A stretch of 64,000 nt of DNA from Magallana gigas. Its lineage: Eukaryota. The notes under the pieces were generated by a model that was not told the origin of the DNA, searched no databases, and saw only the letters and a program-made list of their open reading frames with translations. How positions within the stretch are numbered: the stretch's first letter is position 1; each line of letters starts with the position of its first letter. Location: the NCBI RefSeq assembly GCF_963853765.1, contig NC_088854.1, forward strand, positions 11,718,001 to 11,782,000, written 5' to 3'. The position numbers and the translations under genes were made by a program. Shown one piece after another: positions 25,401 to 26,186 of this stretch.

Positions 25401-26186
25401 CCACAATATAATATCAATTTTACACATCAAACGAGCTATTTTCAACAAATTTCGCATAATATCTGCAGTTGAAACTATCACGCCAAGATTATGATTGACA
25501 TGAGGACGTGAAACGAACGTCATAATGCCATTACGTCACAATCGCCTTGCATCCACGCAAATTGGATGAAGCAAAAATGAAGCGCTGTCTGTCTTTTGCC
25601 CTTTGCTCTGCTTTGGCTTTGCCATTCTGTTCAGCAGGACCACTATCAATGCATGTATTTGGACATTTCAATGGACAAAGTGGCAAGTTTTCCATTAATG
25701 GATTGGGCGACACAACCACAGGCTCAAGAAACGACGTAGTTGGAGACGGAGAATTCATTATGTGGCAGGATGCCTTGATCTTCACGAGCCTTCTGATTGC
25801 GATAATCTTAGCTGGAATCGTGGGATATTTCTTTGCAAAACTGAGGGAAGGTTGCAGTAATGGTGACAAAAGCGGAGCAGAAGAAATGGGTTTGAGTAGG
25901 GATCCAACATTTAAAGATAATATCGTGGATTTTACAGCAGAGATGTTTGAAAACGAAGAGGAAAAATAATGTCATTTCCGTGTGTCCTTTTTTACGAGAA
26001 ACCAACGTTTCATTTCAACTGAAGCATTTTAATGTTTGAAGACTGCGATTTAGGTAATATCAGAGTTTCATTGTACTTATGATAGATAATTACAATTTGA
26101 TTCTGGTTATATCGTTGTTGTTGTTGTTGTTGTTGTATTTATACTGTTATCAGCATGGATTGCAGTTCTTCATGTGTGTGTGTGTG

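What the first reader, a model, noticed from the sequence alone, without database searches (positions are those of the whole stretch)
25577..25969. Nested antisense gene candidate encoding a small orphan type I membrane protein
Seen: an uninterrupted 130-codon ORF on the strand opposite SLC6-A intron 10, more GC-rich than the surrounding intron. It has an orderly signal peptide, Gly-rich ectodomain, 22-aa TM, basic stop-transfer, juxtamembrane Cys and acidic tail ([17 protein letters not shown]). CRE-like ACGTCA motifs lie at ~25517 and ~25535. Such topology is unlikely by chance. I recognise no family. Inference: a real host-nested gene, possibly an accessory subunit or trafficking partner of the transporter (collectrin/ACE2 serve this role for some vertebrate SLC6 members), though that link is speculative.
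Basis: partly seen in the sequence, partly recalled or inferred. Interest (0 to 1): 0.72.

Follow-up and report, generated by a model that had tools for sequence, protein, structure and literature searches.

The report
Unannotated oyster membrane mini-protein gene
A 130-codon reading frame lying backwards inside an intron of a Pacific oyster SLC6 transporter gene belongs to a small, unannotated, oyster-only family of single-pass membrane proteins that has sat in this same intron since before distant oyster lineages split, but transcription of this particular copy and any link to the transporter remain unshown.

Summary
An ATG-to-stop ORF of 130 codons lies at 25577-25969 (+). It is antisense in an intron of an expressed SNF/SLC6 gene and GC-richer than its surroundings. 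It has a signal-peptide-like N-terminus, one TM helix and an acidic tail, and two ACGTCA motifs lie upstream.

It is not a TE fragment. The genome holds one intact paralog 4.2 Mb away and one 26-residue remnant.

The best evidence for a gene is a genomic contig from a distant oyster (SLC6-exon dS about 1.6). It carries an intact 146-aa homolog in the same intron of the same SLC6 ortholog. pN is 0.35 against pS 0.72, all indels are in frame, and TGACGT-type half-sites again sit upstream.

The paralog lies in spliced mRNAs, in the last exon of another gene.

Evidence against:
- No plus-strand poly(A) read could be assigned to the window copy.
- A repeat has replaced its native upstream DNA in the reference haplotype.
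- No canonical poly(A) signal follows the stop.
- The ortholog in one related species has lost its start and gained a stop.
- Close comparisons give omega of about 0.5-0.7.

No known family matches. The transporter-partner idea was not tested.

Verdict: a real lineage-restricted gene family. Activity of this copy is likely but unproven.

The parts
25577..25969 (+). Single-exon CDS of 130 codons plus TAA: the small type I membrane protein, copy A of the family
   Evidence: homologs
25577..25636 (+). Signal-peptide-like N-terminus (residues 1-20: MKR, hydrophobic core, C-S-A before G21). F17-C18-S19 are invariant and G21-P22, M25-H26 nearly invariant across the family
   Evidence: cleavage site is inferred, no predictor was available
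25637..25750 (+). Gly/Ser/Thr/Asn/Asp-rich ectodomain (residues 21-58). Predicted disordered, it is the most variable part between copies, species and haplotypes
25751..25855 (+). Conserved core: juxtamembrane motif EF(I/T)(M/I)[10 protein letters not shown] helix (about A66-A87, with A79/G80/G83), K88-L-R90 and invariant C93. This is the only confidently modelled helix (residues 57-93)
   Evidence: omega about 0.19 here between window and L022
25856..25966 (+). Cytoplasmic acidic tail. It holds a short predicted helix (117-123) over a (V/M/L)D(F/L)(T/A)xE motif that recurs in the distant homolog
25505..25538 (.). Promoter-like cluster of bZIP/CRE-type half-sites: ACGTCA at 25517-25522 and 25533-25538, plus a GACGTGA variant at 25505-25511
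   Evidence: 2-3 such sites lie 40-100 nt upstream of the ATG in every copy and species, including L027
25514..26032 (+). Block of clear nucleotide homology with the paralog at C2:7.52 Mb (84% over the core). Weaker similarity continues to about 26150
24764..25485 (.). 722-nt young high-copy repeat ending 91 nt upstream of the ATG. It is absent from another haplotype (L020), which has 419 nt of older unique sequence there
26267..26366 (-). Host SLC6 exon ([16 protein letters not shown]...AWIYG) that bounds the intron, about 300 nt beyond the ORF's stop in convergent orientation
23402..23530 (-). Next host SLC6 exon (…[13 protein letters not shown]…) at the other end of the intron. The upper boundary is approximate
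25534..25971 (-). Open frame of 146 codons on the opposite strand, wobble-on-wobble with the CDS. Judged a by-product of the CDS composition
   Evidence: no host-sense reads or joints here

Best explanation
The ORF is the coding sequence of a real, unannotated, single-exon gene of an oyster-restricted family. Its product is a 130-146-residue type I membrane protein. Reading from the N-terminus it has a cleavable signal peptide, a short disordered ectodomain, a strongly conserved juxtamembrane-plus-TM helix ([12 protein letters not shown], small-residue face A79/G80/G83, then KLRE and an invariant Cys), and an acidic tail. The position backwards inside this SLC6 intron is the family's old location. 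In the Magallana lineage a second copy arose in the terminal exon of an unrelated gene and is transcribed there. The two copies exchange sequence in their 5' halves. Individual copies have been damaged in some lineages, as expected when two copies are redundant. Transcription is inferred to start from its own promoter carrying 2-3 CREB/ATF/PAR-type bZIP half-sites just upstream of the ATG, which would make expression conditional rather than constitutive. The conserved part is one helix with a small-residue face and a membrane-proximal Cys. I therefore infer that the protein acts by packing that helix against another membrane protein, as a small regulatory or chaperoning partner. Shown: ORF, topology features, copy number, synteny, constraint at depth, motif conservation, and transcription of the paralog. 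Inferred: cleavage, promoter use, expression of this copy, and the mode of action.
For: - Copy number: two full copies and one 26-residue remnant in 564 Mb, so not a TE.
- Synteny: L027, a genomic contig of a distant oyster, has an intact 146-aa homolog on the strand opposite the same SLC6 ortholog's exons, in the same intron. P0009, 164 aa, the representative of the protein cluster that L027's product belongs to, matched the family profile at E = 1.2e-22 against 1.8 billion proteins.
- Constraint at depth: SLC6 exons between the two species give dS 1.6 and dN 0.02, and the intron is unalignable. The small ORF gives pS 0.72 against pN 0.35. All five gaps of a plain nucleotide alignment are multiples of three.
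- Closer comparison: window against L022 gives omega 0.47 (p = 0.008), and 0.19 in the TM/juxtamembrane block.
- Upstream motifs: half-site clusters are conserved in every copy. Close pairs of half-sites are expected 0.18 times per window by a Markov model.
- Transcription of the paralog: its contigs are spliced with GT..AG on the ORF's strand, so that copy is transcribed in sense.
- Population variation: 16 M. gigas haplotypes of copy A all reach the normal stop or beyond. Variation is concentrated in the ectodomain, 11 of 37 sites against 6 of 69 elsewhere.
- Structure: AlphaFold models only residues 57-93 with confidence, as one helix.
Against: - Expression: no plus-strand read could be assigned to this copy in two stranded poly(A) runs, about 2 Gb sampled from each. 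The two reads in that orientation carry the paralog's signature bases. Copy-A-specific contigs in RNA assemblies reach depth 5-10. That compares with 0-4 for other intron pieces and 350-440 for host exons, and their strand is unknown.
- Local damage: the reference haplotype has a repeat in place of native DNA from 91 nt upstream of the ATG. No AATAAA or ATTAAA lies within 330 nt of the stop.
- Weak close-range constraint: omega between the two M. gigas copies is 0.70 and not significant. The frame control shows that such small samples give similar p-values in stop-filled frames.
- Losses in relatives: one related species has ACG for the start and a TGA at codon 42 in 11 of 11 contigs. Another has the paralog's tail deleted. 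An M. gigas paralog allele lacks the TM.
- No protein-level evidence exists.
Confidence: 0.65

Rival explanations
1. The family is real, but this window's copy is a silent duplicate on its way to becoming a pseudogene. The transcribed paralog on the same chromosome would carry the function, and copy A would still be open only because too little time has passed or because gene conversion from the paralog keeps repairing its 5' half.
For: No assignable plus-strand reads. Repeat insertion with loss of about 415 nt of native upstream DNA in the reference haplotype. No canonical poly(A) signal. The orthologous copy is already disrupted in a related species. The A-B 5' halves are nearly identical at synonymous sites, and mosaic haplotypes exist, consistent with conversion. 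The probability of no stop after 57 neutral substitutions is 0.16, so openness alone is weak evidence.
Against: The copy-A-specific 3' half, which conversion does not reach (58-75% identical to B), is invariant at most residues across 16 haplotypes, and its stop is kept in 15 of them. The TM/juxtamembrane block shows omega 0.19 along the A lineage. The CRE-type sites are intact. Only about 1% of two runs of unknown tissue was sampled. The nested locus is the ancestral one and is intact in the distant species.
Confidence: 0.22
2. The conserved element is not protein-coding. It would be a cis-regulatory or antisense-RNA element, for example one controlling the host SLC6 gene or acting as a UTR element in the paralog's mRNA, and the open frame would be incidental.
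For: Between close species the ORF's synonymous sites are also more conserved than the neighbouring UTR: dS 0.15-0.19, against about 0.27 expected from the 77% identity of the UTR. Both strands are open. The paralog sits in what looks like a 3' UTR.
Against: At depth, synonymous sites are saturated while non-synonymous change is halved. Indels are all in frame. The start, the stop region and the hydrophobic pattern of signal peptide and TM are retained, while flanking DNA is unalignable. A non-coding element would not preserve this pattern.
Confidence: 0.07
3. The real reading frame is the 146-codon open frame on the minus strand, the host's sense strand. It would be, for example, an alternative SLC6 exon or another gene.
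For: The frame is open in the window (25971-25534), in the paralog and in L027 (195 codons). Its omega mirrors that of the plus frame in one comparison, 0.39.
Against: The two frames share wobble positions, so the mirrored omega is expected. Stops in that frame need T|TA, C|TA or T|CA across plus-strand codons, which are rare because the protein has few Tyr, His and Gln. No ATG lies near its start. There are no host-sense reads or splice joints over it although the host is well expressed. The paralog is transcribed in the plus-ORF's sense.
Confidence: 0.03
4. It is a chance ORF or a fragment of a mobile element.
For: About 100 chance ORFs with this layout are expected per genome. A high-copy repeat abuts it.
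Against: The repeat ends at 25485, outside the ORF and its conserved upstream block. Only two copies and one remnant exist. Homologs are conserved and syntenic across species.
Confidence: 0.01

Closest known systems
Host-nested (intronic, opposite-strand) protein-coding genes of animals
   Same: A complete small gene lies inside one intron of a larger expressed gene on the other strand. The arrangement is kept between distant species.
   Different: The nested gene is unannotated and lineage-restricted. A second copy sits in the terminal exon of an unrelated gene's mRNA. Independent transcription of the nested copy has not been shown.
FXYD regulators of Na,K-ATPase (Pfam PF02038)
   Same: General build: a small type I protein whose conserved part is an extracellular juxtamembrane aromatic/acidic motif, a TM helix with conserved Gly, and a basic stretch with membrane-proximal Cys. 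This resemblance comes from my own knowledge of the family and is a lead only.
   Different: There is no F-x-Y-D motif; the motif here is EFxxWQD. No Pfam match appeared even at E = 10, and no match to solved FXYD chains. No evidence of any pump or transporter partner.
Collectrin (TMEM27) / ACE2 as ancillary single-pass partners of SLC6A19 and SLC6A20
   Same: A single-pass type I protein paired with an SLC6 transporter. Vertebrate B0AT1 and SIT1 need ACE2 or collectrin for trafficking (PMC10491607).
   Different: No sequence or domain similarity. The ectodomain here is about 45 disordered residues with no collectrin-like domain. The only link to SLC6 is genomic position. The paralog is not in an SLC6 gene, and the neighbouring SLC6 paralog has no nested ORF.
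Taxonomically restricted small membrane proteins (micro-proteins missed by annotation)
   Same: Short, single exon, no domain, disordered outside one TM helix, fast-evolving, and absent from named protein sets.
   Different: It is older than a typical de novo ORF, being conserved across a divergence at which synonymous sites are saturated.

Membership tests
SNF / SLC6 transporter (host gene) | Match to Pfam PF00209 above the gathering score | tested here: met
   Four exon translations score 28.9-72 bits against a cut-off of 27, covering profile positions 1-46, 75-149, 363-411 and 472-522
Host-nested gene | The whole ORF lies inside one intron of an expressed gene, on the opposite strand | tested here: met
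   Host reads are all of the minus-strand orientation, with CT..AC joints. Flanking exons lie at 23402-c.23530 and 26267-26366. Host-sense depth over the ORF is about 0. The joint spanning this particular intron was not itself listed; exon continuity follows from the SLC6 peptide order
Host-nested gene | Own transcript from the nested gene's strand | tested here: inconclusive
   No copy-A-specific plus-strand read in about 2 Gb sampled from each of two poly(A) runs. The two reads in that orientation are of paralog type. Low-depth copy-A contigs in RNA assemblies are of unknown strand
Protein-coding gene under purifying selection | Non-synonymous change well below synonymous change, frame kept across species | tested here: met
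   Window against L027: pN 0.35, pS 0.72; gaps of 3, 6, 12, 33 and 6 nt; both ORFs intact. The signal is weaker and partly non-significant at close range
Type I single-pass membrane protein | N-terminal signal peptide plus one TM helix, with positive charges after the TM | tested here: inconclusive
   Hydropathy and the AlphaFold helix 57-93 fit. No signal-peptide or topology predictor was available and there is no experiment
FXYD (PF02038) | F-x-Y-D motif before the TM and a match to the family profile | tested here: not met
   No Pfam hit at E up to 10 for the window ORF or up to 0.1 for other family members. The motif is EF(I/T)(M/I)WQD. No PDB FXYD chain was matched
KCNE (PF02060) | Match to the family profile | tested here: not met
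   No Pfam hit; no PDB chain matched
Collectrin / ACE2 C-terminal collectrin-like domain | Collectrin-like ectodomain next to the TM | tested here: not met
   No Pfam or PDB sequence match. The ectodomain is about 45 residues and modelled as disordered
Transposable-element fragment | Many dispersed copies | tested here: not met
   Two copies and one remnant. Only bases 25450-25485, the end of the neighbouring repeat, are multicopy

The most novel reading that the evidence does not exclude
The nested mini-protein is a dedicated single-pass partner of the SLC6 transporter whose intron has housed it since before distant oyster lineages split. It would act as an invertebrate functional counterpart of collectrin/ACE2 for B0AT1, with the nesting tying the expression of the two together.
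Probability: 0.06. Interest if true: 0.8.

Novelty: new member of a known kind. Interest (0 to 1): 0.42.

Why it matters
It adds a gene family that every oyster annotation in the searched collections has missed. It is also a clean example of a short, domain-less membrane protein that can only be recognised by synteny and codon-level conservation. The gene has stayed inside one particular SLC6 intron over a divergence at which synonymous sites are saturated. It has also spawned a transcribed copy inside another gene's last exon, and individual copies decay in some lineages. That makes it a compact case for studying the birth, duplication and turnover of nested micro-protein genes. If the mini-protein turned out to bind the host transporter, it would be the first invertebrate single-pass SLC6 partner, but nothing here shows that.

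Tried and rejected
- Family searches were blank. Pfam gave only a sub-threshold DUF4229 hit. PDB sequence searches with two profiles gave only a chance hit to an influenza C HEF chain at E 0.3-1.2. ESM Atlas feature scores were 0.79 or lower, below the level that shuffled proteins reach a third of the time.
- Scans of metagenome and viral contigs with the family profile found nothing, so there is no sign of viral origin.
- I did not run a fold search, because the model is one helix plus disorder and matches would be meaningless.
- I did not run complex prediction. I do not claim binding, position alone is not reason enough, and the full spliced SLC6 protein had no reference I could pass.
- Two apparent 'divergent homologs' (P0006/L024 and P0012) are bisulfite-converted reads of the paralog, with every C read as T, and were discarded.
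- The plus-orientation reads over the ORF looked like expression at first. They carry the paralog's bases at 25642, 25689 and 25696 and were rejected as mis-laid.
- Pairwise dN/dS at close range is not decisive. The six-frame control gave p-values below 0.01 in frames full of stops, so I rest the coding argument on the deep comparison.
- Contig look-ups for P0009, P0010 and P0016 returned nothing, so only one DNA sequence of the distant clade was available.
- The consistent length of about 970 nt for the L022-type contigs is explained by microsatellites at both ends, not by a defined transcript.
- Literature search for a nested gene in an oyster SLC6 intron found nothing relevant.
- Earlier scan notes on this genome did not cover this locus or its paralog.

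Full report
**1. The observation**

The ATG is at 25577, the TAA ends at 25969, and there are 130 codons on the plus strand. GC is 0.44-0.45 over the ORF and about 0.28-0.33 around it.

The product starts MKR and continues with a hydrophobic stretch ending C-S-A before G21. A Gly/Ser/Thr/Asn/Asp-rich stretch of about 45 residues follows. There is one strong hydrophobic segment at about A66-A87 (Kyte-Doolittle 19-residue maximum 2.5). Then come K88-L-R90, C93 and an acidic tail. ACGTCA occurs at 25517-25522 and 25533-25538.

The host gene is an SNF/SLC6 transporter on the minus strand. Four exon translations match PF00209 above threshold. RNA reads show CT..AC joints and a single orientation opposite to the ORF. 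Exons at 23402-c.23530 and 26267-26366 border a 2.7-kb intron that is almost empty of host-sense reads.

Shuffled windows give 0.16 ORFs of this length and 0.01 with this layout. That is rare per window but expected about a hundred times per genome. The layout is therefore a reason to look, not proof.

**2. Not a repeat; two copies in the genome**

The organism is Magallana (Crassostrea) gigas or a very close relative. The neighbour protein at the paralog locus is UniProt A0A8W8KQM9_MAGGI.

A protein search and a DNA search of the whole 564-Mb assembly find three things. One is the window copy ('A'). One is an intact paralog ('B', 137 codons, 73% amino-acid and 84% nucleotide identity) 4.2 Mb away on the same chromosome. 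The third is a 69-nt remnant on another chromosome that encodes only 26 ectodomain residues.

Only 25450-25485 is multicopy. It is the end of a 722-nt young repeat (24764-25485) with more than 1,200 candidate copies at 94-98% identity.

Clear A/B homology is confined to 25514-26032. That runs from 63 nt before the ATG to about 66 nt past the stop, with weaker similarity to about 26150.

**3. The paralog is transcribed in sense, inside another gene's mRNA**

Eight Logan contigs carrying copy B map to the genome in three blocks separated by 537 and 90 nt. The second gap is bounded by GTAAGT...CAG on the ORF's strand. The first begins GTAAG, and its acceptor end is less clear in the printed sequence. 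They are therefore spliced mRNAs.

Their first ORF is a 99-residue protein spanning the three exons, annotated in UniProt as uncharacterised. The small membrane-protein ORF starts about 530 nt after that ORF's stop, in the same last exon.

I could not determine whether B is translated from this long mRNA or from a shorter transcript starting at its own conserved upstream block.

The membrane-protein ORFs appear in no named source. All hits come from raw gene calls on Logan or ENA contigs.

**4. Expression of the window copy is not shown**

I laid two stranded poly(A) runs (about 2 Gb sampled from each, about 1% of each run) and two RNA-type contig sets on 22700-28000.

Host exons reach depth 5-40 in reads and 350-440 in contigs. 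Over the ORF there is no host-sense read and about one opposite-sense read per run.

Those reads have C, C and G at 25642, 25689 and 25696. These are the paralog's bases, and the two copies are 90-94% identical there. They are therefore mis-laid paralog reads.

Copy-A-specific contigs (25590-25738 and 25753-26094) exist at depth 5-10 in the RNA-type assemblies. Other intron pieces are at 0-4. Their strand is unknown, and the runs were chosen because they hold this stretch. I treat this as inconclusive.

Two features could weaken this allele:
- **Upstream DNA:** in the reference haplotype the repeat replaces native DNA from 91 nt upstream of the ATG. Another haplotype (L020) has 419 nt of unique sequence there instead. 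That sequence is absent from the reference genome but shares a block with the ortholog's flank in another species.
- **3' end signal:** no AATAAA or ATTAAA lies within 330 nt of the stop, although the paralog and both other species have one.

**5. Close-range evolution is fast and uneven**

Between A and B, Nei-Gojobori counts give dN/dS of 0.70, which is not significant. The signal peptide and ectodomain are almost identical at both site classes. The tail has pS about 0.55 against pN about 0.22.

Haplotypes of each copy carry the other copy's ectodomain states. Either gene conversion homogenises the 5' halves or some contigs are assembly chimeras.

Between the window copy and its syntenic ortholog in another oyster (L022, whose homology extends into the intron flank), omega is 0.47 (p = 0.008). 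It is 0.19 in the juxtamembrane/TM block.

A six-frame control tempers this. Frame +0 is best only in comparisons with L022. The minus frame that shares its wobble positions mirrors it, and some stop-filled frames reach similar p-values.

Copies are also being lost:
- In the L022 species all 11 contigs, from at least three studies, have ACG for the start and TGA at codon 42. That leaves a 79-codon Met-to-stop ORF covering the TM and tail.
- In another species the paralog's tail is deleted between two TCCATTC repeats.
- An M. gigas paralog allele has an 87-nt in-frame deletion of the TM.

**6. The deep comparison decides the coding question**

An exhaustive profile search of 1.8 billion representatives added more diverged members. 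P0009 matched at E = 1.2e-22 over the whole profile.

One member of its cluster lies on a 3.4-kb genomic contig, L027. The minus strand of L027 carries four exons of the same SLC6 ortholog with nearly identical peptides. An intact 146-codon homolog lies on the plus strand, about 200 nt from the exon ending ...AWIYG. That is the same intron and the same convergent orientation as in the window.

The SLC6 exons give dS 1.6 and dN 0.02, so neutral sites are saturated, and the intron no longer aligns. Blastn recovers only about 105 nt, over the TM.

Even so:
- The small protein is 42% identical, with pS 0.72 and pN 0.35.
- The five gaps of a plain nucleotide alignment are 3, 6, 12, 33 and 6 nt.
- The start, the signal-peptide pattern, the TM, the Cys and the acidic tail motif are all kept.

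Invariant residues across 12 sequences cluster in F17-C18-S19, S35-G36-K37, E59-F60, W63-Q64, A66-T70, G80-I81, Y84, A87, L89 and C93.

In 16 M. gigas haplotypes of copy A, 11 of 37 ectodomain positions vary, against 6 of 69 in the rest. All but one haplotype end at the normal stop, and that one reads through it. Truncated alleles would have escaped that cluster, so this is only supportive.

**7. Upstream motifs**

Every copy has 2-3 TGACGT/ACGTCA half-sites 40-100 nt upstream of the ATG. This holds for window, paralog, both mid-distance species and L027, which has three TGACGTAA sites in the other orientation.

The window has 37 half-sites in 64 kb. A first-order Markov model predicts 0.18 close pairs per window. 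A conserved cluster at this position, in flanks that otherwise do not align, points to a bZIP (CREB/ATF/PAR-type) controlled promoter or leader. Which factor binds, and where transcription starts, are inferences.

**8. What it is like, and what it is not**

No Pfam family, solved structure or Atlas cluster matches.

AlphaFold with the 12-sequence alignment gives one confident helix at residues 57-93 (pLDDT 75-88) and a short helix at 117-123. Everything else is below 50.

The build recalls single-pass partners of pumps, channels and transporters: a disordered ectodomain, a conserved juxtamembrane motif, a TM with a small-residue face, a basic stop-transfer stretch with a nearby Cys, and a short tail. 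Examples are FXYD, KCNE and collectrin. That is a resemblance from my own knowledge. The defining FXYD motif and all family profiles fail, so I file it under none of them.

Vertebrate B0AT1 and SIT1 do need ACE2 or collectrin for trafficking (PMC10491607). Here the only link to SLC6 is position. Three facts bear on that link:
- The paralog lives outside any SLC6 gene.
- The tandem SLC6 paralog in this window has no such ORF in its equivalent intron, 55342-56500.
- Against those two, the nesting has been stable over a long time.

**9. Verdict**

The family is a real, conserved, unannotated, oyster-restricted gene family; my confidence is about 0.8.

The window copy is intact in every haplotype seen, and its copy-specific half looks constrained. 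Its own transcription is not demonstrated, and the reference allele has a disturbed upstream region. I put about 0.65 on the full statement that this copy is a working gene acting through its TM helix. I put about 0.22 on its being a silent, decaying duplicate.

The transporter-partner reading stays open at about 0.06.

This is a new member of a known kind: a host-nested, lineage-restricted micro-membrane-protein gene. It is of moderate interest.

Noticed in passing
window 24764-25485: A 722-nt young, high-copy repeat: at least 1,264 candidate copies, with full-length copies 94-98% identical. It is transcribed on both strands. It is an insertion polymorphism here: haplotype L020 lacks it and has 419 nt of unique sequence that the reference genome does not contain.
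   Followed up: partly
L005:89-2380 (G000:C2:7519963-7522254): The paralog's small ORF lies in the last exon of the spliced mRNA of an annotated 99-residue uncharacterised protein (UniProt A0A8W8KQM9_MAGGI / K1QAU9_MAGGI), about 530 nt after that ORF's stop. It could be a bicistronic mRNA, a downstream ORF, or two overlapping transcripts merged by assembly.
   Followed up: partly
L025:795-1121, L026:722-1045: Two old runs carry a paralog allele with an 87-nt in-frame deletion that removes exactly the juxtamembrane motif and TM (residues 60-88). There are no GT..AG ends, so it is a deletion allele or a template-switch artefact rather than a splice form.
   Followed up: no
L024 (P0006) and P0012: Two 'proteins' in the public collections are translations of bisulfite-converted reads of the paralog, with every C read as T. 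They pose as divergent homologs at about 50% identity. This is a trap for homology searches in Logan-derived protein sets.
   Followed up: yes
window 30216-30605: Two tandem versions of one SLC6 exon ([13 protein letters not shown]... and [13 protein letters not shown]...). The scan has already noted and followed them up as mutually exclusive exons (s1-361633).
   Followed up: no
window 55342-57900: A second SLC6 gene in tandem on the same strand (exons [16 protein letters not shown]... at about 56600 and ...[12 protein letters not shown]... at about 55342). Its equivalent intron is only about 1.1 kb and has no homolog of the nested ORF.
   Followed up: partly
window 10124-10181, 13758-13777, 35405-35426, 43942-43963: Other tight pairs or triplets of TGACGT/ACGTCA half-sites. 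The window has 37 half-sites against 17 expected from a first-order Markov model. I did not check whether they lie in repeats or promoters.
   Followed up: no
G000:C7:43412002-43412079 (L006:1498-1575): A 26-residue remnant of the family's ectodomain (YAFGHFNVENGKSSMKGLDETNTGSQ) with no TM or tail nearby: a dead third copy.
   Followed up: yes
window 26106-26265: (GTT)n, (GT)n/(CA)n and (GA)n microsatellites fill the gap between the ORF's 3' flank and the SLC6 exon. A (GA)n run occupies the same place in L022 and L027, so the microsatellite position is old.
   Followed up: no
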